A stretch of DNA of 64,000 bases from Penicillus capitatus (GCA_965649825.1 OZ287699.1:372001-436000); one strand, 5' to 3'; counted from the first letter of the stretch, positions 7,894-48,705 are shown. A program made the numbers and translations. Notes: a model not told the origin generated them from the sequence alone.

Positions 7894-8102
7894 GACGCGG
7901 ATATGATTTTGTTCGAAAGAATGAGAAGAAAGCAGATTTTCAATTATCGGATATTTTGAGCGTTTTGTGGTGACCGTTGTGAAACCCTTACTCATCTCGT
8001 GCAGATTCTCTTCGTCGAGCGGCCTGTTCATGTAGACCCACAAAGGCACCTACCAGATGCAATCCACGCATCGTGTCACATTCGTGGCAGACAGACAGGC
8101 AG

Positions 8103-9232
8103 CTAGGTATCACCTGCAGCATGATAGGGACGTGGCCCTCCAAAATGCAACATCAAGGCACGCTTGTTGTTTCGTACAGCTGCGCCTTGGCGAGAAGAGC
8201 AGGAACTGCATTGAGGATAGAATCTCTGGACGGGTGGCTGAAACGAAATGTCCAGTAGGTGTGTGATCTGCACAAGAACATTATCTCTGGACCGATGGAA
8301 TGGCACACACCATTCTTGCTTGTTTTCCAAATCCAAGTCGATCTGCCACGGACAGGGGATCGGCCAAGAGAGTGAACTTGGTTGGCGGAATGTGATCCGC
8401 AATGAATTTTCCAGATTTCGTTCCTTGAAGCACCCAGCCCAGCCTCACGGTCAGCCGCATCCACCAGGTGTGCACTTACCGCAGCTGTGACAGCCGTACC
8501 GTTTGAAGAACTCTCCGATCTCATTTCTCTCATTTGGCGTGGCATGAAACGAGACCCGTGCAGGAAGAGACTGTACGGCATAGGCACCCGGATGGAAGAG
8601 ATCGCTCGGCATGACATTGCGGAATCTTCCTCCCAAGAACTGCAGACAGAAACAACCATAGTGCACACCTGCATAACAAGACATCAATGCTTATCTTCCG
8701 CACCTTGTAGCAGGACAGTCCGATAATGATGTCCGTGATGACATGGTCCGAGCGGTATTTCCAAAAGGCAGGGTGTGAGATGGCATCAGGACCGTGGGAC
8801 TGCAGAAGGTGTGAGCATTTGGAGAATTGTGCAGCTGTGACAGAGGCCATGGCGACGCCTGTCGCTCCCAAAAGGCTGCTCAGTATCGGCGTTGCGCATG
8901 ATACACGACAGCAGTACCCAATCGTCTGCCAGTCGACATTTCTCGTACACGGACAGCATCGATGGTGCCTCGCACCTGAGCGGCAAAGAGTCCCAATGTG
9001 TAACCAGTCGTCGCCACAAAAGCATGCAACACGAAAGATGAGAGATCCAGCGCAACACGTCCCAGATCTCTTCCGGCACTCCGTTGCCAAGACCTTCGGC
9101 AGTTTTCCGTCCTGAATGGTTTGTACTCGAGATTGACACGTGATATACTTCAGACGCTGTTGCGCTTTCCTGCGCTGGGTTGACCAGTCGAAGTGCGTTA
9201 TCCTGAATTCACCGACGGACGATCGTAGGCAT
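8103..9232 (-). CDS. Protein with hydrophobic N-terminal half and C-terminal HNH-like (CxxC...DHxPP...CxxC) nuclease domain; start approximate
   Basis: Spliced exons give FLGGRFRNVMPSDLFHPGAYAVQSLPA...YGCHSCGTKSGKFIADHIPP...QRFYPQCSSCSSRQG. A GTAAG...CAG intron splits the CxxCG motif. Confidence 0.7.
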
Positions 9233-11187
9233 TAAGGGGTGCGGAATTGCCTTTGTCTGCGATAGGAGGTGGCGGCTGTTCGTCGGAATGTCGTCACGAG
9301 TCTTGGCATTCCTCCACCAACACGATGACGTGACGTGTGTGCTGTCCTGTCGCTTTCATGATGTGACGTCGTGTCTGTGCACCGTCACTTGCCAAGGCAA
9401 TCCTTAAATGGTCACACTTTTTCATTCGTTTCGACTGGTCTCTCTCCTTCTCAGTGTTTTCGCCTACTTCGTCGCCGGGATGTTATAGCCATCGACGAAC
9501 AACGGCGCCCAGCCGAATGCCGTCATCATCACATGGAAGGCTTAGACGACAACGTGGATTCGATGACATTGATCTGATCAATCAAAAGAAATGGATCGGC
9601 TGCGCGAAACAATGCTCTGTTTTGTTCATTTGTGTTACCGACGGGCTGGACGCTGAAAGGCCGCCTTATTCTCTCTTACTTGTTGCAGACCATACACACC
9701 TGTCAAGGTCAAGAACGAGACACACTTTAGTCTCCGAGGAGTCGATTCGATTACGGTTCTGTCTCCAGGAAACCTTCACCAGATTCTCACAAAGAACTTA
9801 CCTGCGTCTTCCACGCATCTCTTGGCTGCTGGATGGACCTGACGTCGACTGTTCTCGTAAAGGAGAGAAGAGAGCGATATTTCACGCTCCTGGGACTTCA
9901 GACGCAAAGACACCTTCAAAAGTATAATGAATTTGAGCTGGCCCATCTTCGAAGAATGGGGAATACCTAGAAGAGGAAGCCAATCCTTCTTTCCTTGTGG
10001 TGCCACCACATCATTGTCTTTAACGCGAAGTCATCACATCACCGTCGATGCCGATCGTTTCTTGGTTTGTCTGTCCGAAAGAAGGATCCATTCGAGCCGA
10101 ATGTTGGATGGAACCCTGGACGACGATAATATCTGAAGCGTTTATCTGCTGCAGCCTACTGATCTCGTCGGGAGGATTGCCACCAAGAGCAAACAGCTTC
10201 CTGTAAAGATCAATCTGGTCCAAGTGCATTGGCTGTCCTCGTGCATGAATGAAAGACATCTTTCACGAGCCCACTGAGAAGCAGCTCTGAAAAAGTCAGA
10301 TCGATTGTTTGATGTAGATGGTCTGCCAGTTGGATTCTGAGGCGTCTTTGCTGTCAGACCGACGCGTAACTCGTAATCTCACTCTTTCATAACAGAGTGT
10401 TGTCATCTATACTGTTCTGGGCCGTGTGGATCGCAGATGCCGGCCTCCAGCGGTCTGACAGACACGTCGTCGGTCCTGCCTTATCTGATTTCATCTTCGA
10501 CTGTCGCATTGGAACATTCCTGCGTCGCGCATCTCGTAATTGCAAAAAACAGACGTCTTATCGCCTCTATGGACGGCCTAGATCTCGAGTCTTTATCCAT
10601 CTGTGTTTTCAGTGCATCTGTGAAGTTTCCTGTGAAGAATTCGGGTACATCAACCGACCTTAGTGCTCATTGGACTTGACGACCGTCACCTTCAGCTTTC
10701 TCGATTAAGCAAATCTTTTCGATGTTACATTCGTCTGATCGAGAAACAGCCGTACTTCATTTCTGAACCTTATTTGTCGGTCGATGTTTTCCGTCCACAA
10801 AAAGTTCGACGACGAATTCGACGAGGTAAAGCCAAGACGCATTTCTCTCGACAACTAAGCCAATTTCCGTCCGCAGAACGACGTCAAGAGCCACAGCGAG
10901 TCTTTCTACCCTAAAAAGATGAACGACGGTTCCCTCCACTGCGCCAAACCCTCAGAACAGCGGGCGGGAAAGAAAAACGACCGTGCCCTAACGAAGACGG
11001 TAAGGATACCGAACTCTTCCGCCTGTCCCGCCATGGTCGGTGTTTTCCCAGCACGAGCGTTCAACGGTCGCCGAAGAATGCGCAGTCATCGAAGACTGTC
11101 CGAAGAAGCCGGTCGCTAGCGAAGTCTGGGTGCCGTACCGACTAGGAACACCTCATACGATCAACGTGGTCGACGCCGCGCGACGCA

Positions 11188-14100
11188 ATGACCGACCTCG
11201 ACGGGCCGAGGTGCGCGACAACAGCGCGAGACCACGAGCTCCGATTCGTGCCTATTTTTCAGGGAGGCCGACGCGAGGACGGAAATTTGAGTCCAAGACT
11301 CAACGTTTATCAGGCTTCGAAGGTGATAGGCCCCTTTCCGATGACTTGTATGCAACTATGTATTCAACAGATGTGGGACCCTGTGAGCGTCGTCAACACG
11401 TTTCCCTCGCACACTTCTCTTCCTCGATGCCGCGAAAAGGGCTCTTCGGTTCTCTTCTCCAGAGAATTCGACGGCGGACAAGCTCAGCGCATCAAATCAC
11501 GCATGACAAGGGGCACTGCTGCCAAAAACACGCCCCCGGTCAGCTCAACTTGGCCGCCTCTCCCTCAGACTGAACGGCACAGCTCCCGAGGTTCGACCCT
11601 CGATCGCGCAGAGGTGCGGTGTTTCTTGTCTCGTTCCGGCCTGCAGCTCTCCTCACAGGGAAACCAAAAGAAGATCTGCGAGATCGAGCTGGAGGGACAC
11701 GGTCTCGTGCAGATCCTTCAGGTCCGAGGGAGGCTTGCAGGGAGGATTGTCGAGCGAGCGGGACCGTTCTCGAGGAGGATTACCGTTCCGCTCTTCTCCA
11801 AGGGTTTCTCCGATCCAGAAGAAGCGACACGGGGATTGGCTCGCCTGCCGCCGAGCGCCGTCCGCCGTCGCGTTCACGTCCTTTCCGACAGAGAGAATGG
11901 CGTGGAGACGTTCATCTACGTGGGGGATCTAGGACTTCTCGGTGGCGGAGACAGAGAGCCCCCGGCTGGCGGCGGCGCGCTCGGACGCCAAGCTGCCGCC
12001 AGCTCCCGGCCAGAGAAGAAGCACTCTCTGGTCTCGCCCGACATCTTTCGCCACTATGCCGGGAGGAAGGAAGAATTCAGCGAACTCTTCGAGGCGTTCA
12101 CCTCAAGCGGCGAGTCGGTCGTCGTCAAGGCAATCGCCGGCCCGGCCGGCATAGGAAAGACGCAGCTCGCAATAAAGGTGTTCGAGTGGCTCAAGATGAA
12201 GGGCAGCTACGACCACACCTTCTGGATCCCTTCGGACTCGAAGGAAAACCTTTCCGCCGCCTTCCTGAACATGGCAGACTACCTGGAGATCTCTGCAGAC
12301 GACGAGATCCCTGTGTTCGTCGGCCGCGTTCACCAGGAGCTCGGAGGGTCGCGATGCCTCTACGTCTTCGACGACGCCTTTGATCTCGAACTGATCCGCG
12401 AGTACCTTCCACCGGAGGTCGGGCATGCGATTGTCACGACGCGAAACGCTGTAGCAGGGAGCTGGGAGGGCGACACGGTGCAGCTCGGGCCGTTCGACGA
12501 GTGCGATGCGTGGTTCCTTGCGCACAGCTTCGGATACACCCGGTCGCCGCACTCGGAGGGTCTGGACGATTTGATCGAGTTGCTGCCTCCCTACCCGCTC
12601 ACTCTGGCGCAGTTCTTCTCGATGATGAAGTACGAGGGCGTGCCGAGCCCCGCCGAATGGCTGCAACAGGTGGAACGGTACGCCCCTTCGAGATACGAAG
12701 CCGGGGTCGTAGAGATGCTCTCCGAAGAGCACGACGTCAGAGGAGCCAGCGCGATGGTCTACCTGTTTCGCTCGAACGTGCTGAGCATTCTGAGGGAACC
12801 CGACGACCTTGGAACGCACTGTCTCGACACACTCATCAGGCTGTCGCTGCTGGACCCTAATGGGGTGCCCATCAAGTGGGTGTGCGAATGGCACGGACAA
12901 GGAGATCGGCAATCCGAAGCAGAGGCGCAGACATCCGTAAAGCTTCTCGAGCACTACTCGTATGTCTCGTGGAACGAGAAGAACAATCAAATCTACATTC
13001 ACGCAGAGACACAGCTCCTTGCGAGACACCTGCTCTTACACAGCAACGAAGCAATTCCCGAATGGAGAGAGAAGCTCGCGAAAAAGGCCGAAGACAGAGC
13101 AAAAGATCACATCAAGACCATCGTCCATTCGATAAGGAAATACACCAGCGACTGGAGAACGGATCGTTCGAACCGAGAATCGTGGACGTCGCTCGCGCGG
13201 AACGGGGTCTCGCTCCTCAAACACTGCGAAGAGAGCAACGACATTGGCGTGGAGTTGAAGCTAGTCGAGCACATTGCATGGGCTTACTCTAAGCTGTGCA
13301 TGTTTCGCGAGTGGCTCTCCTACCGTCAAAGAGCCCTCGACGTGTGCGAGCGCCTCAAAGGCGACGCGGACCATCCGGATCTCGTCCAATGCATCCGGAA
13401 CTACGCCGTCGGACTCTCGCGAGTCGGAAGAGACAGCGAAGCACTGCCGTTCCGCAAGAGAGCGCTCGACATGTGCGAGCGCCTCAACGGCGACACGGAC
13501 CATCCGGACCTCGTCCAATGCATCCAGAGCTACGCCATCGGACTCGAGCGAGTCGGAAGAGACAGCGAAGCACTGCCGCTCTACAAGAGAGCCCTCGACA
13601 TGTGCGAGCGCCTCAACGGCGACGTGGACCATCCGGACCTCGTCCAATGCATCCGGAACTACTCCGCCGGACTCTCGCGAGCGGGAAGAGACACCGAAGC
13701 ACTGCCGTTCGACAAGAGAGCCCTCGACGTGTGCGAGCGCCTCCACGGCGACGCGGACCATCCGGACCTCGTCCAATGCATCCAGAGCTACGCCATCGGA
13801 CTCGAGCGAGTCGGAAGAGACAGCGAAGCACTGCCGCTCTACAAGAGAGCCCTCGACATGTGCGAGCGCCTCAACGGCGACGTGGACCATCCGGACCTCG
13901 TCCAATGCATCCGGAACTACTCCGCCGGACTCTCGCGAGCGGGAAGAGACACCGAAGCACTGCCGTTCGACAAGAGAGCCCTCGACATGTGCGAGCGCCT
14001 CAACGGCGACGTGGACCATCCGGACCTCGTCCAATGCATCCGGAACTACTCCGCCGGACTCTCGCGAGCGGGAAGAGACACCGAAGCACTGCCGCTCTAC

Positions 14101-14787
14101 AAGAGAGCCCTCGACATGTGCGAGCGCCTCAACGGCGACGCGGACCATCCGGACCTCGTCGACTGCATCCAGAGCTACGCCGTCGGACTCGAGCAAGTCG
14201 GAAGAGACACCGAAGCACTGCCGCTCTACAAGAGAGCCCTCGACATGTGCGAGCGCCTCAACGGCGACGCGGACCATCCGGACCTCGTCGAATGCATCCG
14301 GAACTACTCCGCCGGACTCTCGCGAGCGGGAAGAGACACCGAAGCACTGCCGTTCGACAAGAGAGCCCTCGACATGTGCGAGCGCCTCAACGGCGACGCA
14401 GACCATCCGGACCTCGTCGAATGCATCCAAAGCTACGCCGTCGGACTCGAGCAAGTCGGAAGAGACACCGAAGCACTGCCGCTCTACAAGAGAGCCCTCG
14501 ACATGTGTGAGCGCCTCAACGGCGACGCAGACCATCCGGACCTCGTCGAATGCATCCAGAGCTACGCCGTCGGACTCAAGCAAGTCGGAAGAGACAGCGA
14601 AGCACTGCCGCTCTACAAGAGAGCCCTCGACATGTGCGAGCGCCTCAACGGCGACGCGGACCATCCGGACCTCGTCGGATGCATCCGGGACTACGCCGTC
14701 GGACTCGAACGAGCGGGAAGAGACGAAGAAGCGTTGCCCTTGCGCGAGAGAGCAGAGGAAATGCGTAAGCGGCTTGGCAGTCAATAA
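11188..14787 (+). CDS. NLR-like STAND protein: N-terminal module + NB-ARC-type NTPase + 11 TPR-like repeats; intronless, 1199 aa (true start may be ATG 11503)
   Basis: Walker A GPAGIGKT (12139), Walker B LYVFDDA, sensor IVTTRN, GLPL-like YPLTLAQ, MHD-like IHAETQ, then kinesin-light-chain-type TPR units (DHPDLV..CI..Y..GL...GRD.EALP..KRALDMCERL). Confidence 0.93.
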   Translation: MTDLDGPRCATTARDHELRFVPIFQGGRREDGNLSPRLNVYQASKVIGPFPMTCMQLCIQQMWDPVSVVNTFPSHTSLPRCREKGSSVLFSREFDGGQAQRIKSRMTRGTAAKNTPPVSSTWPPLPQTERHSSRGSTLDRAEVRCFLSRSGLQLSSQGNQKKICEIELEGHGLVQILQVRGRLAGRIVERAGPFSRRITVPLFSKGFSDPEEATRGLARLPPSAVRRRVHVLSDRENGVETFIYVGDLGLLGGGDREPPAGGGALGRQAAASSRPEKKHSLVSPDIFRHYAGRKEEFSELFEAFTSSGESVVVKAIAGPAGIGKTQLAIKVFEWLKMKGSYDHTFWIPSDSKENLSAAFLNMADYLEISADDEIPVFVGRVHQELGGSRCLYVFDDAFDLELIREYLPPEVGHAIVTTRNAVAGSWEGDTVQLGPFDECDAWFLAHSFGYTRSPHSEGLDDLIELLPPYPLTLAQFFSMMKYEGVPSPAEWLQQVERYAPSRYEAGVVEMLSEEHDVRGASAMVYLFRSNVLSILREPDDLGTHCLDTLIRLSLLDPNGVPIKWVCEWHGQGDRQSEAEAQTSVKLLEHYSYVSWNEKNNQIYIHAETQLLARHLLLHSNEAIPEWREKLAKKAEDRAKDHIKTIVHSIRKYTSDWRTDRSNRESWTSLARNGVSLLKHCEESNDIGVELKLVEHIAWAYSKLCMFREWLSYRQRALDVCERLKGDADHPDLVQCIRNYAVGLSRVGRDSEALPFRKRALDMCERLNGDTDHPDLVQCIQSYAIGLERVGRDSEALPLYKRALDMCERLNGDVDHPDLVQCIRNYSAGLSRAGRDTEALPFDKRALDVCERLHGDADHPDLVQCIQSYAIGLERVGRDSEALPLYKRALDMCERLNGDVDHPDLVQCIRNYSAGLSRAGRDTEALPFDKRALDMCERLNGDVDHPDLVQCIRNYSAGLSRAGRDTEALPLYKRALDMCERLNGDADHPDLVDCIQSYAVGLEQVGRDTEALPLYKRALDMCERLNGDADHPDLVECIRNYSAGLSRAGRDTEALPFDKRALDMCERLNGDADHPDLVECIQSYAVGLEQVGRDTEALPLYKRALDMCERLNGDADHPDLVECIQSYAVGLKQVGRDSEALPLYKRALDMCERLNGDADHPDLVGCIRDYAVGLERAGRDEEALPLRERAEEMRKRLGSQ
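13330..14778 (+). repeat. Coding tandem array, 11 x 129 bp (43-aa TPR-like units) plus a partial unit
   Basis: The CATCCGGA motif recurs at a 129-bp period (13372, 13501, and so on). Eleven HPDLV motifs are present in the protein. Confidence 0.97.
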
Positions 14788-17700
14788 AATCTCCATCTTG
14801 ATCGGCTAACGTATTTTTATCTTCCAAGTTCCATTTGAAGGTTTCTACACATGTTTGTTTTTACATATCGTGGCCACGTCGTTAGGACTCTGGAAACGCG
14901 AACGACGATGAAGGCTTGTTGCATCACAAGGATTGTAAACACCTTTGTGGTGCGGATTAAATGGACTCGGAACGAACTAACGCGTTAAGCCGAATGCACG
15001 ATCACGTCGAATGCATCTCTCCTCGGTAAGTTGCGCGAAGCCGAGTCTGATGCCAATACGACAAAATCCGATATGCTGGCAATTGCGTTGATTGTTACGC
15101 TTCTACTATCGTACAAACTGCAGCATGGCTGTCGGTTGTGAGTTGGGTGTGATCGTTTCTCGATGACGAATTTGCAGTCGTTGCTCTTAATGTCGTCTTC
15201 TCATTCGATGTCATTAGCGTTTTGCGATTTTGCCACTCCATGCTGCTAGATTAGAGTGAGAAAACGGAGTTATCTGCTCTTCCTTTCCGGAGCTAGTGGT
15301 AAATGCTTTTCGTCTAGGTAGCTTTTTGCAATTTTCTTGCCGTTGGAGCGTCGATTGTAGAGAAGCGTAAAGTTGTGATATCGATATCGTTGCACTGCTT
15401 TCATCGACGGATCCCGATAACGTCGACTGAACAAAGGGGTGTTGCCAAGATTTGACGTGGCAATGTGACTGCCTCGTTTCCGATGGGTTCACGTCTTGGG
15501 GGGCGCAGGTAGAGTCATCTGAGGCGTCGCTCTCTGGCCATGGACGAGGGATGACTCACCTGTTCAGCGGGTCACATCGTTTTGGGCGTAGAAATGCGTA
15601 GGAGAGGAGACATTGAGACTCTCTGTTCTTGTAAGCTTTTGGACTCTGAGCGTGCCTTCGGCGTAAAACGTGTGTGAGCAACGCTCACCCTGGCTGACGA
15701 CGAGGCGCTAGCACCCTCGCGTGCCGTTGTTCCTTATCCACCGTTGTACCAGCATACTCCGTACTTATCGGCGCTAGACTTCTTCAGACAAGCGGAACGA
15801 GGAAATCCCGACGCTCGCCACGACGACACCCTAGCCGAGGACGAACCGCCCAGTCCGGGGGAGGACGGACCCACCGACGCAGAAGTTGACGAGGAAAGAC
15901 CTCAACGGGAGTCAGAGCAAGGGCGACAAGGGGCGCGACAATAGTAGCATTTGATTCTATCAGGCACGTGGTTCTTCTAGTAGGCGTCGTCTTACGTGCA
16001 GCATCACTTGCTGCAAACGCGTTCTCAGGTACAGATGCTTCATGTTTCGTGATTGTGTGTTTTCTTTGCGCCAACCGTTATAAGATCTAAACTCTAATCT
16101 TGTTTTTCGTCGTTCGTATTTCGTTCGACTATGTCGTTTGGTTAGTTCTTAGCAGTCCGTCAGTTAAAGCAGAGCTTTTTGTTGTAACACTCAACTGCTT
16201 TCACTCCTCAACTGCGTGAATTCCTCTGCTATCTTTAATTAACCGTTTAGTCTTACGTTAGTTTGTTGTCTTAGTTTTTGTAACTACTTGCATGTATGTC
16301 TTCTTTCTACGGACTGACTAACACTCACTTGTTGATCTTGTTTTCAAGAAGTCTCCTTTTTGGTGTTTTTTGTCGCGCAATGTCTTTTGGCTTTAAAGGT
16401 CGTCCGATTGCTAACTTCTTCTCGAGACACAATACCATATCACAAAGAGCCTTGCTTGCCAACACGAAGGAGAATGACGAATAATGGATGAAAAACAGCA
16501 TAAGAAAGCCATAGTGTGAACATATGTTTTGATTCTTTGTAAAATACGAAACGATCTTACAGTAAGATCTCACTAGGTCACCATCCTCCGATGTCGTTCT
16601 CACTCTTTGATACGCGCCGATCTTGTCTTGTACTTTATCTCCGTTTGTCTGATTTGGCTTCTCGGCTGGAGTAAGCACCCTTCCTATCTTTTAGTGAAAT
16701 CTCTTGTGCGTTTCCTTTCCGGGGACCTCCCTAATTATTTGCTAGTTTTCAGTTTTCATTGGCAGGTTCTCATTTCTTGTCATTTCTACTTTTTAACCTG
16801 TGAAACCCGTAACGCTCTTTCCATTGGACGAATTTTCAATCCTTTCGTTTTGCTTGACTCTTCACGAGCGCACTTTTCCTTCTTTGTACTCATGGATATT
16901 AACAACACATCCGTTCGACTTCCTTTACTCTCAAGCCTCCAAGTTCCTGGAAGAGGTGAGCCTACAGTGTTTGCATACCCTATTGCTATTTTAGAAGATC
17001 GATAATTTTTAACCTGATCTGCTGCTTTTACAGTCGGCAACGTGCTCTGTGCACGAATCTGTCGCTGGCAAAACTGGGATCTCCGGAAGGATGCAGGGGT
17101 ATGAATCAACATTCAATTAGTTTCGTTGGCCGGAAAGAGTCTTCCATGCAACCTGGAGTGCGAATGAAAATGGTCTGTTCCTCATCCTTGCCTTTGATGT
17201 GACGATTGTGACGTTTCGATGTCTGGCTCGCTGCTTTCGCGTCACCTTACTAAACGGACAACTCAAATGTTTGCCGGCACCATCCTCAGGTCAACCTCAC
17301 ATCGGCATTCACAACAATTTCGACGTCAGAATGCCGAATCTCAGCGAAATGTCATTGGAGTCCATGTGTTTTGAAAACTTCCATATCAATGTCATCTATG
17401 CAGCAACGTGTGACGGTTGGTTAACAGAGAGACACTCTATGCCAACAGCTGGGCGTCTGAGGTGTTCCTGGTGATCCCGGTTGTCGTACTCGAACGCGAA
17501 CAAACACTCGGCAATACTCTGCGTGTATGGGTTGCCGCACAGGTAACTTTCAAAAATAGCGAGGTGAGCGGCGCCGACATCAAATTCCCTTCGTTCCTGT
17601 CCTCACTTCAGACACAGCAGTTTGATAAATGACTAGCTGACCAAGTTCCCTGGGATCGTGGTTTTGATCTCTTGCATGTATGTACGATTGATCTTAGTAT

Positions 17701-32078: not shown

Positions 32079-32220
32079 TGTCGAAAGGTATTTCCGACAG
32101 GTGTCGAAAGGTATTTCCGACAGGTGTCGAAAGGTATTTCCGACAGGTGTCGAAAGGTATTTCCGACAGGTGTCGAAAGGTATTTCCGACAGGTGTCGAA
32201 AGGTATTTCCGACAGGTGTC
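32079..32220. repeat. Perfect tandem array, 6 x 23 bp (TGTCGAAAGGTATTTCCGACAGG), each unit an imperfect palindrome
   Basis: Units start at 32079, 32102, 32125, 32148, 32171 and 32194, followed by TGTC. There are no spacers. Confidence 0.97.
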
Positions 32221-32685: not shown

Positions 32686-34400
32686 CTACGGTAACAAACT
32701 CAAATTCGAAGGTGGTGAGTGAATTAGACTATCCGAGTGTTCGTAGTCTAAGATGCGAAAGAGTCGAGTCGACTGCTGGCAGCTTGCAGATATCAGACAG
32801 AAACGTGTGCAAAGATCCACTGCTGCGATGATGAATCTTTGTGATCCGTCTGGCTTCATCGGTCCAATGACATCTAAACCTACGCACTGGTTCATCTGCT
32901 GCCAGGTATTGAATGATTGCGCGACAGGAGGGTCTTGTCGCGCAAAATGTTGACATCTGTCACAACTTTGCACCCAATCTTGCACATGTGATGGGGCATC
33001 CGGAAAGTAGATCATCTTCTGCAGGTTCTGGAGGGTTGTTTGGACTCCATAATGTCCGCTCTGCTCATGTGCTCTGCGCAACCACTGAATGATTTCACCC
33101 CTGTCGAGGCAACACGGTCTCCGGTGTATTCCATCGGCAGAGTATTCCATCTTGTTTGTCCGCAACTGAAAAGAACTGCTTCGATGCTTGAGACGTGCTC
33201 TCTGTTGCGGTGTCGCTTCTTCGGGACATCTCCCAGTTCTCAGATAATCTTCCATTTGCAGATACCATTCCGTCCATTCCTTACTGATCTTAGCTGCCAT
33301 CACCGTCGATCCTTCTGCCTTCGAATTCTTTAGCTCTCTCCTCCACCACGGACTCCTGCTGAGTAAGTCGGCCACGTCGTTGGCCACTCCGTCGACGTGC
33401 TGCACTCTTCCTGCAGCCAGATTTAGCGCGTCCAAATGCTTCTGCACCAAAAAGCTCTGGTCTTGGGTACCGCTGGCTTGCTTTACAACAGTCGCGTTCG
33501 TAAAGATTGTCAGCCGCCTGCCCATGATTAGATGTCTCACTTCCTTCGCCGCCCTTTCCATCCCGAGCAACTCTGCCTTCCCACCTGAATGGAACTTATC
33601 TCTTTGGAAGCCTCCAGCCCCGAGCCGCATCAATTGTTTCGTTTCTCTGCTGAAGAGAGCGTATCCGAATCCGTCTCTGCTCGCGTCGACGTATAGATCG
33701 ACAGAGATGCCGGATGCATCAGGTCGGTTGTATCACAAGCGGCTCATTGTCTTGATGATAGTACTCCAACGATCAGGATCTTCTTGCCAGTAGTTTCCGA
33801 TCGTCACTGCGTCAGCGTTGCACAACTGCTGCCAGACTTCTGACGTCGCTTCGACAGTAGCGCCAGTTGCTCTTCGGCCGACAGTGCCGACTGCGGGCAC
33901 GCTCCGAGAATGAGTTCCTTCAGGACATGCCACTTCTGTTCTGTCTCTATCGGGTTGACGGGAGCGCCAAAGAACTGATACACGAAAGCGGCGTTGCCCG
34001 TAAAGGCCGCGTTGAAGGCAGCGTTGGAAACGAAATGAGGTTCGATCTTGTCAGTCACTTGTCGCAACAGCTCAAACGCGGGGGGAACCGCACTGAAGGC
34101 TCTTAACCACCCGTCGTATGCGTGGGTGATAGTCGTCCTCGATGAGCACAGCAGCGCTCAGGATCGACGCGAACGCCTCGCGGTCAAGCCTCGAGGCAAG
34201 GCGCTCCGAAACCAATTGTGATCCCGTCACGATGAATTAAAACCGAGGTTGCAGTGCTTGTTAAAAAGGGGCGTTATTGACAAGATCTAGCGTCTTTTAT
34301 ATCAACAAGTATCCATCAGTGTATCCGTCAGTCAAATCATTCGCTCCTCGGCTTGACAATCGGTTGCAGGAAATGTAGCTCCTAACATCGGTCTTGTAAC
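32686..34400 (-). mobile_element. Defective Ty3/Gypsy LTR retrotransposon: LTR, PBS, gag fragment, RNase H, truncated integrase; protease and RT core missing
   Basis: PBS-like TGGTTTCGGAGCG (34214-34202) lies 2 nt after ...TCACA. Also present: gag-like WHVLKELIL...LLSKRRQKSG, RNase H LYVDAS..GFGYAL and GVANDVADLLSR, integrase HEQSGHYG...CDRCQ and GLDVIGP..VDLCTR, and an in-frame TGA near 33733. The outer LTR end is uncertain (34390-34682). Confidence 0.88.
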
Positions 34401-46410: not shown

Positions 46411-47677
46411 ATGTCACGCAACAAGAAGCCTTGGAAGAGCGGGACAGTCGTCGACTGCTTCGACGACATTGATGTTTGTGGGTCTCCTCACTCTTTCCGA
46501 ATTTTATTTATTCTTCTGCACCTGAAGGCGTTGTCACTTTCTGTTTGCCTTGCCTTGTCTTCTCGGAGAACAGGAGCAGTAAGACGGTTGTGTATTGCCT
46601 TGCTGTCTATGGCAGGCCGTCTGTGATGCTGTGTAGCTCTTCATGGTGGAGCAGGAAATGTGAACGATGAAGGAATTGACCCGTGTCTCATATACTGCCT
46701 CATCATGTCTGTCAGCGCCTGTACGTTGCAGTGCCTTTACGCCTATTCCACTCGAACAGACATTCGCCGCAAATACAATTTAGAAGTGCCTAAACTGGTC
46801 ACTCTTTGTCCTCACACACAGTTACCTGTAGGAGGAACCGTGCGATGACTGTATGACGCATATCTGGTAAGCGATTGCAGCATGGAGATCTGTTTCGTTG
46901 GAGATGGACGTGTGTCACAGTTGCCATTGTTGCGCACTGTGCCAGGAGCACAGGGAATTGAGAATGTATCCGTTGACGACGTGGCCGTTGCCGGCAATTC
47001 AGGACACGGATTCGCCGCAGCAGACACCCAATGCACGCTATCAAATACCTCATACACGATATCAGACACCCACAGCATCCTATCAGACATCCAATACGTC
47101 GCATCAGACAGGCGATCCGGGATATATGCCGACCAATGCATTGCGTCCGACACCAGGTATGTCCGAAAATGTGTGGAATCGACCACCAAGAAAGCAGCGA
47201 CCGTGGCCGCAGTCGAGTCCGTACGTGCCATACGGTGGTCCAATGCCAGCGTATGGCGGCTATCCTGCGTCCTCTGTGTCCAGTATTGGGAGTTCCAGTA
47301 TACCTTACCCGTATGCCAATTATCCTCAACCGTATCCGGGGGGATCCCTTCCCTATGTGGTGCAAGGAGGCTTATCTCCGTTGAATACCTTCCCCGCAGC
47401 GCCACCCAACCCGGGACCGATGCAGCCGCTTGTGTTCGAGCCGCCGCGACCGGGAGATCCGTTCAATGGCGGCCTTCGTGCAGGCATTCCTGCAGAGGTT
47501 TATCATGTACCCAAGCTGCCGGACATACCTCAAGGACCGTTGCAGCCACTCACTCGATCCGAACCGCCTCACGGATCATCATCGCAGCCGCATATCAATC
47601 GATCCGAACCGCCTCAAGGATCATCATCACAGCCCCATCGCGATCGATCGGAAATCCAAGAGTCTCCTCGATCTTAA
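46411..47677 (+). CDS. PLAC8-family Cys-rich membrane protein with a long Pro/Tyr-rich tail
   Basis: KPWKSG..DCFDDIDVC, TFCLPCLVF, RTDIRRKYNLE, CHSCHCCALCQEHREL. Confidence 0.85.
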
Positions 47678-48705
47678 GACATTCTCCGATGATACCTCAA
47701 CGTTTTTCGATGCATCGTCGTTGTTGTGTACATCTTTGAACAAACAAATCTTAACAAGGGGTTGTTATTGCTCTTGACGCTAGCGTCTTGTCTACGTGTT
47801 GTTGTTGTTGACGATGGTATTCTTTCTTTAAGTGGACGGACGGACGTGTGGACGGATGGATGATATCATGATACAATTGTTATGGAATACGAATGGTTCA
47901 GACGAAATGTCAATCACAAGCAGCGCGGTTAACAATGATGTTAAGAACATCGCAACTAGGAAATAGTTATGTGTATATTGCCATCATCTGCCCTCCATCC
48001 TTGCCCCGCGGAGCCCTGTGGTTGAAGGACCCGTAAACAACACCTCTCTGAATTGCTTGCTCCCCGACAGTTTGCAGTTATGCAAAACTCTTTATTGATG
48101 CTACCGATAGAAAGTTAGTTTGTAAGTGAGAACACGAGCTCGTCAAAAAGAGACAATCAAACAAAATGCACATCATTCGAGACACATGGCTCGTCTTTAA
48201 CAGTTATTAAACAACGTGTTTGGAACAGCAACCACGTGTACAGCTGGGAATGATGCAAATTCATCTCTAAAACAAGATCATGTGTGTGTGTCGCCGTTTC
48301 CGCATTCGTAGCCGAGACAGGTTTCGAAAACTGGAACAAGAGATTCAATCAATCGATCGATCGTCGATCATCATCATCCCCCGAGACACTATCAGCCTCC
48401 TAGAGACATGACATGACAGATGGAACGGCACTTTTTGCTTGCGCTCATTTATTGAACGGGCATGAGCACAGAAGAGCACTACAATTAGCGATGGAAGTCA
48501 CCAAGTAGTCACAAGGTGGGCGGAAAGGGAATTTAAGAATGCACACAAAGGCACTGGTTTCTCTATCTTGACCGGTTCGACTAAAAGACGAGTGGTGGAT
48601 GTCAGTTCTCTAAGATAGATAATTAGCGCGGTGCGGGGTTCACGAGAAGAGCAACTCCAACAGCTATCTATTCATGTGAGCTGATATCCTGTTGCTGAGA
48701 CCAGT

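What the first reader, a model, noticed from the sequence alone, without database searches (positions are those of the whole stretch)
13330..14778. TPR array with a modular, shuffled residue code (resembles fungal HiC-NLRs and TALEs)
Seen: 11 units of 43 aa on an almost invariant DNA scaffold, with variation concentrated at a few sites: position 3 (A/T/V), 10 (Q/D/E/G), block 13-22 (type A RNYSAGLSRA versus type B QSYA[I/V]GLE[R/Q]V), 26 (S/T) and 31-32 (FR/FD/LY). Block order is A' B A B A A B A B B C. Units 2-3 and 4-5 form a near 258-bp dimer, and the blocks recombine independently with the flanking sites. By eye, synonymous differences are few relative to replacements. Known: fungal NLRs such as HET-E use highly conserved internal repeats reshuffled by unequal crossing-over to generate new specificities. 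Inference: a diversifying non-self receptor or effector in a green alga.
Basis: partly seen in the sequence, partly recalled or inferred. Interest (0 to 1): 0.78.

Follow-up and report, generated by a model that had tools for sequence, protein, structure and literature searches.

The report
Algal NLR-like receptor, near-identical TPR repeats
The repeat array is real: it is the sensor end of an NB-ARC–TPR (NLR-like) switch protein in a green alga, built from 11 almost identical 43-residue repeats that differ mainly on the predicted ligand-binding face, a design already known from fungi, bacteria and brown algae.

Summary
Window 13330-14748 holds 11 in-frame units of 129 bp (43 aa), 91% matching, and units 3 and 5 are identical in DNA.

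The array is the C-terminal part of one 1199-codon ORF (11188-14787, + strand). This ORF also encodes a conserved N-terminal domain with no detectable relative and an NB-ARC NTPase with intact motifs. It is therefore an NLR-like STAND protein with "high internal conservation" (HIC) TPR repeats.

At least 10 relatives sit on long contigs from two metagenome assemblies, with 2-14 units each.

Variation is concentrated at unit positions 20, 23, 24, 27, 30 and 31. These correspond to canonical TPR positions 2, 5, 6, 9, 12 and 13, the concave binding face.
- At these sites omega is about 1.1-1.9, not significantly above 1.
- In the scaffold omega is about 0.2-0.27.

Reassortment and concerted evolution are supported by:
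- four-gamete tests;
- a same-contig pseudogene copy whose differences fall almost only at the variable columns (38 of 40, P = 4e-19);
- array-specific fixed differences.

Not supported or not shown:
- Positive selection is not proven.
- A TALE-like code is not supported.
- An immune role is inferred, not tested.

The host is a green alga; the best named match is a trebouxiophyte. The nearest non-family relatives are bacterial. This is a new member of a known kind.

The parts
11188..14787 (+). Single uninterrupted ORF of 1199 codons: leader, N-terminal domain, NB-ARC NOD, TPR array. The true start codon is uncertain. The first ~160 codons are poorly conserved and carry compensated frameshifts relative to the paralogous copy.
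11674..11964 (+). Conserved N-terminal domain of ~97 aa (ICEIELEGHG ... VHVLSD ... GDLGLLGGGDREPP), with no detectable relative and an unknown fold. This is the position where NLRs carry their effector or signalling domain. In one relative (P0012) the same module is fused to a beta-lactamase-type domain instead of NB-ARC.
12091..12636 (+). NB-ARC nucleotide-binding domain (Pfam PF00931, aa 302-483). Motifs: Walker A GPAGIGKTQ at 12139-12171; Walker B LYVFDDA at 12355-12381; TTR at 12427-12447; GxP-like YPLTLAQ at 12586-12618.
12637..13236 (+). Remainder of the NOD module (helical / winged-helix region with a conserved IYIHAETQLLARHLL motif at 12991-13035) and a helical linker. It is conserved with the bacterial relatives.
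13237..13329 (+). Degenerate TPR-like 'unit 0' (N-terminal cap of the solenoid).
13330..14748 (+). Eleven 129-bp / 43-aa HIC TPR units. Edge units 1 and 11 are the most divergent. Units 3, 5, 6, 8 are type A and units 2, 4, 7, 9, 10 are type B.
13459..13974 (+). Recent 258-bp dimer duplication: units 2-3 and 4-5 differ at 4 of 258 nt.
14749..14787 (+). C-terminal capping helix RAEEMRKRLGSQ and the stop codon. The cap is conserved in the orthologue (KAEEMRKRLGNQ).

Best explanation
The array is the ligand-sensing domain of an NLR-like STAND NTPase: unknown N-terminal domain, NB-ARC, then 43-residue kinesin-light-chain-type TPRs. It is encoded in the nuclear genome of a green alga.

Shown:
- The gene is intact and its NTPase motifs are intact.
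- It belongs to a family of at least 10 paralogues and orthologues with 2-14 units.
- Every array examined shows high internal conservation.
- Units within an array are homogenised, including at silent sites, while a fixed set of codons stays variable.
- Those codons correspond, by the TPR signature residues, to the concave binding face of helix A.
- Variant states are reassorted among units and between two copies ~57 kb apart.

Inferred:
- Unequal crossing-over and gene conversion between near-identical units change unit number and recombine a limited stock of surface variants. This generates new binding surfaces on a constant scaffold.
- Ligand binding in the TPR groove releases the NB-ARC switch.
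- The protein oligomerises and the N-terminal domain signals, probably in defence or non-self surveillance.
For: Architecture:
- TPR_10 5.6e-66, TPR_12 5.7e-62, NB-ARC 6.7e-9.
- Walker A, Walker B and TTR motifs are present.
- The best solved match is the kinesin light chain TPR domain, E about 1e-18.

Family:
- P0001-P0011 and P0142 have 2-14 units.
- Psim (aa) is 0.79-0.93 in the 8 arrays analysed.

Variable sites:
- They are the same in independent arrays. Position 20 takes 14 different residues; positions 27, 30, 42, 23 and 24 follow.
- The polymorphic columns of the window and of the orthologue overlap (P = 1e-5).
- Small residues at 26, 38 and 2 match TPR signature positions 8, 20 and 27. 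So positions 20, 23, 24, 27, 30, 31 equal TPR 2, 5, 6, 9, 12, 13, the concave ligand-contact positions (PMC1261162).
- The entropy helical moment on helix A is 0.41 (P = 0.036).

Selection heterogeneity:
- Binding-face stripe: 12 N to 2 S events in the window, 97.5 N to 23.5 S pooled.
- Scaffold: omega about 0.2-0.27.
- Fisher P = 0.03 (window) and 2.7e-8 (pooled).

Reassortment:
- Hudson-Kaplan Rm is at least 2-3 within 129 bp.
- Against the same-contig copy L002, 38 of 40 differences lie in the 36 polymorphic columns (P = 4e-19). 35 of 40 reuse a base already seen in the window array.
- Variable columns differ at 21%, flanks at 1.8-3.8%, scaffold columns at 0.4%.

Concerted evolution:
- Scaffold nucleotide distance is 0.071 within arrays and 0.161 between arrays.
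- 45 of 52 units have their nearest neighbour in their own array.
- Edge units escape homogenisation.

Unit number differs between the orthologous loci: 11 here, 7 in L001.

The nearest non-family relatives carry Lipase_3, TIR or OTU N-termini, as NLR-like proteins typically do.
Against: - Omega at the predicted binding face is not significantly above 1 (binomial P about 0.3). Relaxed constraint on exposed residues would give a similar picture.
- There are no population data, so repeat-number or order polymorphism within a species is untested.
- The 3-D mapping rests on sequence correspondence only. The AF2 model has mean pLDDT 66 and its coordinates could not be inspected.
- The N-terminal domain has no recognisable cell-death or signalling fold.
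- No expression, ligand or phenotype data exist.
- The translation start is uncertain.
Confidence: 0.7

Rival explanations
1. Neutral young tandem amplification. Two ancestral unit types (A and B) were amplified and mixed by slippage and unequal crossing-over. The variable positions are simply solvent-exposed residues free to drift. The array has no diversifying role, and the protein may bind one fixed partner.
For: - Event-based omega at the variable sites is about 1.1-1.9 and not significantly above 1.
- Overall pN/pS is 1.16-1.54.
- Much of the variation in the window is a linked A/B dimorphism.
- One copy has already decayed to a pseudogene.
Against: - The same positions vary in 8 independently homogenised arrays, with up to 14 residue types at position 20.
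- Variation is confined to one face of helix A. The equally exposed helix B shows no such pattern (helical moment 0.14, P = 0.77).
- Differences between the two recent copies are about 5-10 times denser at these columns than in non-coding flanks.
Confidence: 0.17
2. A non-immune STAND regulator or adaptor. It could be a signal-transduction ATPase like bacterial MalT or AfsR-type regulators, or a cargo adaptor like kinesin light chain. Its TPRs would bind an endogenous partner.
For: - The best solved similarity is to kinesin light chain TPRs.
- NCBIfam gives weak AfsR and strong FxSxx_TPR matches.
- There is no recognisable death or TIR domain in the algal proteins.
Against: - Multi-copy family with variable unit number, pseudogenisation and adjacent retroelements.
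- HIC repeats are strongly enriched in NLR-type proteins (PMC13449251).
- The nearest relatives carry TIR, lipase or OTU N-termini.
Confidence: 0.08
3. Assembly artefact: a collapsed, expanded or chimeric repeat in a metagenome assembly.
For: - Near-identical 129-bp units are error-prone in assemblies.
- The window comes from a metagenome contig at about 41x coverage.
- The paralogous copy L002 is riddled with indels.
Against: - The array has an exact 129-bp period with 0% indels and stays in frame over 1.4 kb inside a 3.6-kb ORF.
- Equivalent intact arrays occur in 7 other loci from two independent assemblies.
- The array is shorter than typical long reads. That last point is my general knowledge and was not tested here.
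Confidence: 0.03
4. A TALE- or PPR-like modular reader in which each unit specifies one letter of a linear polymer through a few code residues.
For: - Discrete unit types in a tandem array on an invariant scaffold.
- Weak PDB hits to designer PPR proteins, E 1e-11 to 1e-6.
Against: - About 11 variable positions per unit spread over three helical turns.
- The TPR_10/12 and kinesin-light-chain matches are far stronger than the PPR ones.
- The PPR hits are to idealised consensus repeats of a different period.
- The array is fused to NB-ARC, which is not a known architecture for TALE or PPR proteins. That last point is my own knowledge.
Confidence: 0.02

Closest known systems
Fungal NB-ARC–TPR NLRs with highly conserved internal repeats (e.g. 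Podospora anserina Pa_2_10340; het-z/PaPLP1 class), Dyrka et al. 2014 (PMC4986451); Ament-Velasquez et al. 2026 (PMC13449251)
   Same: - Tripartite N-domain / NB-ARC / kinesin-light-chain-type TPR architecture.
- Intronless array of near-identical units (Psim well above 0.7).
- Unit number differs between loci.
- Variable residues lie on the concave helix-A face.
- Concerted evolution and repeat reshuffling.
- Nearby transposable elements and pseudogene copies.
   Different: - Unit length is 43 aa, not 42.
- The N-terminal domain is unrelated to known fungal effector domains.
- The NOD is closest to bacterial sequences, not fungal ones.
- The host is a green alga.
- Population-level repeat-number polymorphism and positive selection, shown in Podospora, are not shown here.
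Ectocarpus (brown alga) NB-ARC–TPR candidate receptors, Zambounis et al. 2012 (PMC3341825)
   Same: - Algal NB-ARC–TPR gene family with birth-and-death dynamics.
- TPR units of about 42 aa.
- Shuffling of units and evidence for diversifying pressure on TPRs.
   Different: - In Ectocarpus each TPR is a separate 126-nt exon and shuffling is exon-based. Here all 11 units lie in one uninterrupted ORF.
- Internal conservation in Ectocarpus is described as weak. Here it is strong.
Bacterial NB-ARC–TPR NLR-like proteins: 'MAG Bacteroidota' relatives P0144-P0168; NCBIfam NF040586 FxSxx-COOH system TPR protein
   Same: - NOD is 30-37% identical over about 330 aa, including the IHAETQL motif.
- Same 43-residue TPR period.
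- Tripartite layout with swappable N-termini.
   Different: - The bacterial TPRs are not HIC (lag-43 identity 0.26-0.45 versus 0.68-0.88).
- Their N-termini are Lipase_3, TIR or OTU.
- Their genomic context is bacterial.
- No FxSxx-COOH system context exists in the algal locus.
Kinesin light chain TPR domain (PDB 7ai4, 3nf1, 3edt)
   Same: Best solved sequence match, E 1e-18 to 1e-13. It shares the 'G-(x)DHPD...NL/Y..G......A' helix-hairpin pattern, and cargo peptides bind the concave groove.
   Different: - 42-aa units that are not internally conserved.
- Only six TPRs.
- No NB-ARC domain; it has an N-terminal heptad-repeat region instead.

Membership tests
NLR-like STAND NTPase (NB-ARC–TPR architecture) | Central NB-ARC/NOD domain with intact Walker A, Walker B and sensor motifs | tested here: met
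   Pfam PF00931 6.7e-9, above its cut-off. GPAGIGKTQ, LYVFDDA and TTR motifs located. 4251 NOD relatives at E<=1e-3.
NLR-like STAND NTPase (NB-ARC–TPR architecture) | C-terminal superstructure-forming repeat domain | tested here: met
   TPR_10 5.6e-66 and TPR_12 5.7e-62. The AF2 model is all helix hairpins.
NLR-like STAND NTPase (NB-ARC–TPR architecture) | N-terminal effector or signalling domain | tested here: inconclusive
   A conserved ~97-aa module is present in all family members. It has no Pfam or PDB match, and the AF2 model has pLDDT 40.
NLR-like STAND NTPase (NB-ARC–TPR architecture) | Ligand-triggered nucleotide exchange and oligomerisation | not testable with these tools
   Requires biochemistry.
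HIC (high internal conservation) NLR repeats | Repeat units near-identical (Psim >= 0.7; or >85% identity over >=100 aa) | tested here: met
   Window Psim is 0.867 (aa) and 0.936 (nt). All 8 arrays fall between 0.79 and 0.93.
HIC (high internal conservation) NLR repeats | Repeat-number polymorphism between alleles | tested here: inconclusive
   11 units here versus 7 in the syntenic orthologue from another sample, and 2-14 among paralogues. No within-species alleles were available, and the JGI metagenome scans found no close relatives.
HIC (high internal conservation) NLR repeats | Few hypervariable positions located on the binding surface | tested here: met
   The variable sites 20, 23, 24, 27, 30 and 31 equal TPR positions 2, 5, 6, 9, 12 and 13 by signature-residue register. 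A 3-D check was not possible.
HIC (high internal conservation) NLR repeats | Positive diversifying selection at those positions | tested here: inconclusive
   Omega is 1.85 (window) and 1.13 (pooled), not significantly above 1. It is significantly higher than in the scaffold.
HIC (high internal conservation) NLR repeats | Concerted evolution and repeat reshuffling | tested here: met
   Within-array versus between-array scaffold distance is 0.071 versus 0.161. Array-specific fixed differences exist. Rm is at least 2-3. 38 of 40 differences to the paralogous copy fall at polymorphic columns.
FxSxx-COOH system TPR protein (NCBIfam NF040586) | HMM score above the curated cut-off | tested here: met
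   317.4 bits against a cut-off of 300. The repeated TPRs inflate the score.
FxSxx-COOH system TPR protein (NCBIfam NF040586) | Bacterial locus belonging to an FxSxx-COOH peptide system | tested here: not met
   The locus lies on a 1.58-Mb eukaryotic contig with ChlP, CFAP91, kinase and retroelement genes. Identity to a named family member is only 24%. The whole neighbourhood was not scanned exhaustively.
TALE / PPR-type modular code repeats | One or two specificity residues per unit on a 33-35-aa nucleic-acid-binding repeat | tested here: not met
   The unit is 43 aa with about 11 variable positions. The fold family is TPR_10/12 and kinesin light chain.
Ectocarpus-type exon-shuffled NB-ARC–TPR | One TPR per exon | tested here: not met
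   All units lie in one continuous ORF with no interruption.

The most novel reading that the evidence does not exclude
A green-algal (trebouxiophyte-like) lineage acquired an NB-ARC–TPR43 module from bacteria and fused it to a previously undescribed ~97-aa N-terminal domain. It then independently evolved the HIC repeat-reshuffling regime. This would give a lineage-specific, fast-diversifying intracellular receptor family, possibly used against viruses or in partner recognition, whose N-terminal module is a new signalling or cell-death effector.
Probability: 0.2. Interest if true: 0.7.

Novelty: new member of a known kind. Interest (0 to 1): 0.45.

Why it matters
Green algae are usually described as poor in intracellular immune receptors. 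This locus shows a whole family of NB-ARC–TPR proteins in one algal lineage. It uses the same 'constant scaffold, reshuffled surface' design that fungi use for non-self recognition.

The family adds an independent eukaryotic instance of HIC-NLR evolution. It also offers a compact natural system: 2-14 nearly identical units and a defined set of about 6-11 variable positions, suitable for studying how TPR solenoids acquire new specificities. The uncharacterised N-terminal domain may be a new effector module.

The apparent bacterial affinity of the NOD-TPR module bears on how NLR-like proteins spread between domains of life.

Tried and rejected
- AF2 of the TPR region from a single sequence gave only a medium-confidence helix-hairpin solenoid (pLDDT 66). 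Its Foldseek hits were generic alpha-solenoids and uninformative.
- AF2 of the N-terminal domain with an 11-sequence alignment failed (pLDDT 40). No fold search was run on it.
- Pfam at E<=10, a PDB profile search and PADLOC gave nothing credible for the N-terminal domain.
- A protein search with the CFAP91 ORF, meant to identify the organism, returned only the window's own protein and one unnamed relative. The ChlP exon was used instead.
- Two scans of JGI metagenome contigs found no close relatives, so no alleles were obtained.
- A paper search for the two sample accessions found nothing.
- Rfam found nothing in the window.
- tblastn found no second family member inside the window.
- A/B alternation as a significant higher-order 86-aa repeat was rejected (P = 0.21).
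- Fungal origin of the gene was considered and set aside. The nearest NOD relatives that carry names are all bacterial MAG proteins.
Full report

Tandem Repeats Finder reports a single array at 13330-14724 with period 129, 10.8 copies, 91% matches and no indels. It is by far the strongest tandem repeat in the window.

Cut in frame from 13330, it gives 11 units of 43 aa followed by a 12-residue cap (RAEEMRKRLGSQ) and a stop codon. Only 36 of 129 nucleotide columns vary among the 11 units, and 23 among units 2-10. Units 3 and 5 are identical in DNA. The dimer of units 2-3 differs from units 4-5 at 4 of 258 nt.

The order A' B A B A A B A B B C is correct.

Three refinements:
- The 'block' is separable. 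Units 1 and 11 are mosaics, and so are units of a paralogous copy.
- The alternation of types is not significant (P = 0.21).
- Replacements outnumber silent changes in raw counts. Per site, pN/pS is only 1.16 (all units) or 1.54 (units 2-10).

**2. What the array belongs to**

The array is the 3' third of one uninterrupted 1199-codon ORF, 11188-14787 on the + strand. Pfam finds TPR_10 (5.6e-66), TPR_12 (5.7e-62) and an NB-ARC domain at residues 302-483 (6.7e-9, above its cut-off).

The NTPase motifs are intact:
- Walker A, GPAGIGKTQ;
- Walker B, LYVFDDA;
- TTR;
- a GxP-like YPLTLAQ.

Upstream of the NB-ARC domain lies a ~97-residue module (ICEIELEGHG...VHVLSD...GDLGLLGGGDREPP; 11674-11964). 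It is conserved in all relatives. It has no Pfam, PADLOC or PDB match, and AlphaFold could not model it (pLDDT 40).

The best solved sequence match of the array is the TPR domain of kinesin light chain (E 1e-18 to 1e-13). That domain has 42-residue units; the algal unit has one extra residue in the 'G-D-x-DHPD' loop.

The protein is therefore a tripartite NB-ARC–TPR STAND NTPase, that is, NLR-like.

The NCBIfam equivalog model for the 'FxSxx-COOH system TPR protein' scores above its cut-off (317 versus 300). However, the locus is eukaryotic and is only 24% identical to a named member, so I do not file it there.

**3. Organism and locus**

The window has sparse long ORFs and split genes. These include a geranylgeranyl reductase (ChlP) exon, a CFAP91 ORF, a kinase, a helicase and a retroelement integrase.

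The ChlP exon is 86% identical to Apatococcus (Trebouxiophyceae) and 71-85% identical to land plants. Genes near family members encode VDE, TPT, PAP-fibrillin and PsbP. 'Green alga' is therefore supported. The species is unknown.

The window is positions ~1,221,931-1,285,930 (reversed) of a 1.58-Mb ENA metagenome contig, ERZ25074695 ctg340523.

**4. A gene family with variable unit number**

A search with the N-terminal and NOD part found 11 close relatives, 52-88% identical, all on long contigs (0.3-4 Mb); the eight looked up lie in two assemblies. A profile-free scan of 1.8 billion representative proteins added P0142, which has 14 units.

Unit numbers are 2, 2, 3, 4, 5, 6, 6, 6, 7, 8, 11 and 14.

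L001 (P0005, 7 units, from the other sample) is syntenic with the window on the downstream side. It also carries ChlP on the same contig, so it is a positional orthologue with 7 units instead of 11.

L002 (P0001) lies on the same contig as the window, ~57 kb away and in the same orientation. It is a colinear duplicate of 10682-16864. It has decayed through at least eight small deletions in the NOD and several indels in the array, so it is a pseudogene.

**5. High internal conservation and concerted evolution**

Psim (aa) is 0.867 for the window and 0.79-0.93 for all eight arrays for which I fetched DNA. This is above the 0.7 threshold used for HIC NLRs (PMC13449251).

- Scaffold nucleotide distance is 0.071 within arrays and 0.161 between arrays.
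- 45 of 52 units have their nearest neighbour in their own array.
- The window and its orthologue differ by array-wide fixed substitutions, for example D4/N10 throughout one array and E4/H10 throughout the other.
- Edge units are the most divergent within an array. The terminal units of two paralogues differ by a single nucleotide. This is the edge effect expected from unequal crossing-over.

**6. Where the variation sits**

Across eight arrays the same positions are variable. Position 20 takes 14 residue types. Positions 27, 30, 42, 23, 24, 32, 36, 41, 35 and 31 follow. Most other positions are nearly invariant.

The polymorphic columns of the window and of the orthologue overlap far more than chance would give (P = 1e-5), and 14 columns share the same segregating bases.

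The invariant small residues at positions 26, 38 and 2 have the 8-20-27 spacing of the TPR signature. The alignment to kinesin light chain agrees. This register makes positions 20, 23, 24, 27, 30 and 31 equivalent to TPR positions 2, 5, 6, 9, 12 and 13. Those are the positions Magliery and Regan identified as the hypervariable, ligand-contacting residues of the concave face (PMC1261162).

Variability on helix A has a helical moment of 0.41 (permutation P = 0.036). Helix B shows none (0.14, P = 0.77).

This mapping is by sequence correspondence. I could not inspect coordinates.

**7. Selection**

I used this a-priori stripe of six codons and counted minimal substitution events.

| Site class | Window | Pooled, 8 arrays |
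|---|---|---|
| Stripe, N:S events | 12 : 2 | 97.5 : 23.5 |
| Stripe, omega | ~1.85 | ~1.13 |
| Scaffold, omega | ~0.20 | ~0.27 |
| Stripe vs scaffold, Fisher P | 0.03 | 2.7e-8 |

Neither stripe value is significantly above 1.

Pairwise estimates give pN 0.336 and pS 0.088 at the stripe in the window, against 0.013 and 0.053 in the scaffold.

Purifying selection or homogenisation of the scaffold is therefore shown, together with unconstrained-to-diversifying evolution of the predicted binding face. Strict positive selection is not shown.

**8. Reassortment**

Treating units as haplotypes, 26 of 105 informative site pairs show all four gametes. Hudson-Kaplan Rm is at least 3 within 129 bp, and 2 for units 2-10.

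The comparison with L002 is more telling. In the five gap-free unit pairs:
- 38 of 40 differences fall in the 36 columns that are polymorphic within the window array (expected 28%, P = 4e-19);
- 35 of 40 use a base already present at that column in another window unit.

These columns differ at 21%. The downstream non-coding flank differs at 1.8%, the NOD at 3.8%, and scaffold columns at 0.4%.

Since the two copies separated, their arrays have therefore diverged mainly by exchanging a limited stock of pre-existing variants, while the scaffold stayed homogenised.

**9. Relatives outside the family**

Beyond the family, the best NOD matches are 30-37% identical over about 330 residues.
- They share the 43-residue TPR period but are not internally conserved (lag-43 identity 0.26-0.45 against 0.68-0.88).
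- Their N-termini are Lipase_3, TIR or OTU domains.
- All that carry a name are 'MAG... Bacteroidota bacterium'.
- One sits in a compact bacterial context with an IS3-type transposase.

No closer eukaryotic relative appeared among 1.8 billion representatives. This is compatible with inter-domain transfer, but no phylogeny was built.

The gene is also compositionally distinct. Its GC3 is 0.74-0.77, against 0.46-0.61 for neighbouring ORFs. That could reflect foreign origin or GC-biased gene conversion.

**10. Comparison with what is known**

- Fungal NB-ARC–TPR NLRs with highly conserved repeats show repeat-number polymorphism and positively selected sites on the concave TPR face (PMC4986451).
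- Bacterial NLRs also include HIC TPR and WD arrays.
- Ectocarpus has NB-ARC–TPR receptors with one 42-aa TPR per exon, shuffled as exons (PMC3341825).

The present locus is a clear new member of this kind. Its particular features are the 43-aa unit, an unknown N-terminal module, a bacterial-like NOD and a trebouxiophyte-like host. In the papers I searched, I found no description of this algal family.

The TALE analogy is not supported.

**11. Verdict**

- Best explanation (confidence 0.7): an NLR-like receptor whose TPR sensor is diversified by unequal crossing-over and gene conversion among near-identical units.
- An immune or non-self function, ligand binding in the groove and effector signalling by the N-terminal domain are inferences.

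Noticed in passing
L002 1-19237 (same contig as the window, ~57 kb away; gene at 8001-11740): A segmental duplicate of window 10682-16864. Its NLR copy is a pseudogene, with at least 8 small deletions in the 3' NOD and indels plus an inserted upstream fragment in the array. It is flanked by VDE, TPT and PAP-fibrillin genes.
   Followed up: yes
window 11188-11670, especially 11352-11453: The first ~160 codons of the ORF are poorly conserved. Relative to L002 the window has paired +1/-1 indels. As a result a peptide conserved in P0001 and P0004 (TDVG.CERRQHVS.A.FS) is read in another frame here (ORF 11040-11573). The real start codon, or a 5' exon or uORF, is unresolved.
   Followed up: partly
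window 11650-14787 versus neighbouring ORFs: The NLR gene has GC3 of 0.74-0.77, while neighbouring ORFs have 0.46-0.61. Possible causes are GC-biased gene conversion in a recombining family or foreign origin.
   Followed up: partly
window 13261-14809, other frames and the minus strand: Three further long ORFs (404-511 aa) overlap the array in other frames and on the opposite strand. They are a mechanical consequence of a stop-free repeat unit, not evidence of genes.
   Followed up: partly
window 32079-32220: A perfect 23-bp minisatellite, TGTCGAAAGGTATTTCCGACAGG, 6.2 copies at 100% identity. Each unit is partly palindromic. It lies ~470 bp from an ORF with a retroelement integrase zinc-binding domain (32686-33633, minus strand).
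   Followed up: no
window 47550-47653: A 45-bp tandem repeat, 2.3 copies at 86% identity, inside ORF 46882-47739, which has no Pfam match.
   Followed up: no
P0012 (598 aa, on a 337-kb ENA contig): The family's N-terminal module is found fused, in one continuous predicted protein, to a beta-lactamase/transpeptidase-like domain (PF00144) instead of NB-ARC–TPR. This is either domain shuffling of the module or a read-through gene model.
   Followed up: no
P0006, P0011, P0142 (L008 3001-6423): Three family members carry an additional ~450-residue helical region between the N-terminal module and the NB-ARC domain. It has no significant Pfam match.
   Followed up: partly
L001 1-2905: A Ty3/gypsy-type retrotransposon (protease, RVT_1, RNase H, integrase) lies ~3 kb upstream of the orthologous 7-unit NLR gene. 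This echoes the transposable-element association reported for fungal HIC NLRs.
   Followed up: no
L004 unit 8 and L005 unit 6: The terminal TPR units of two paralogues (P0004, P0008) differ by 1 nt, yet they are 17-18 nt from any unit of their own arrays. Edge units escape homogenisation and retain paralogue ancestry.
   Followed up: partly
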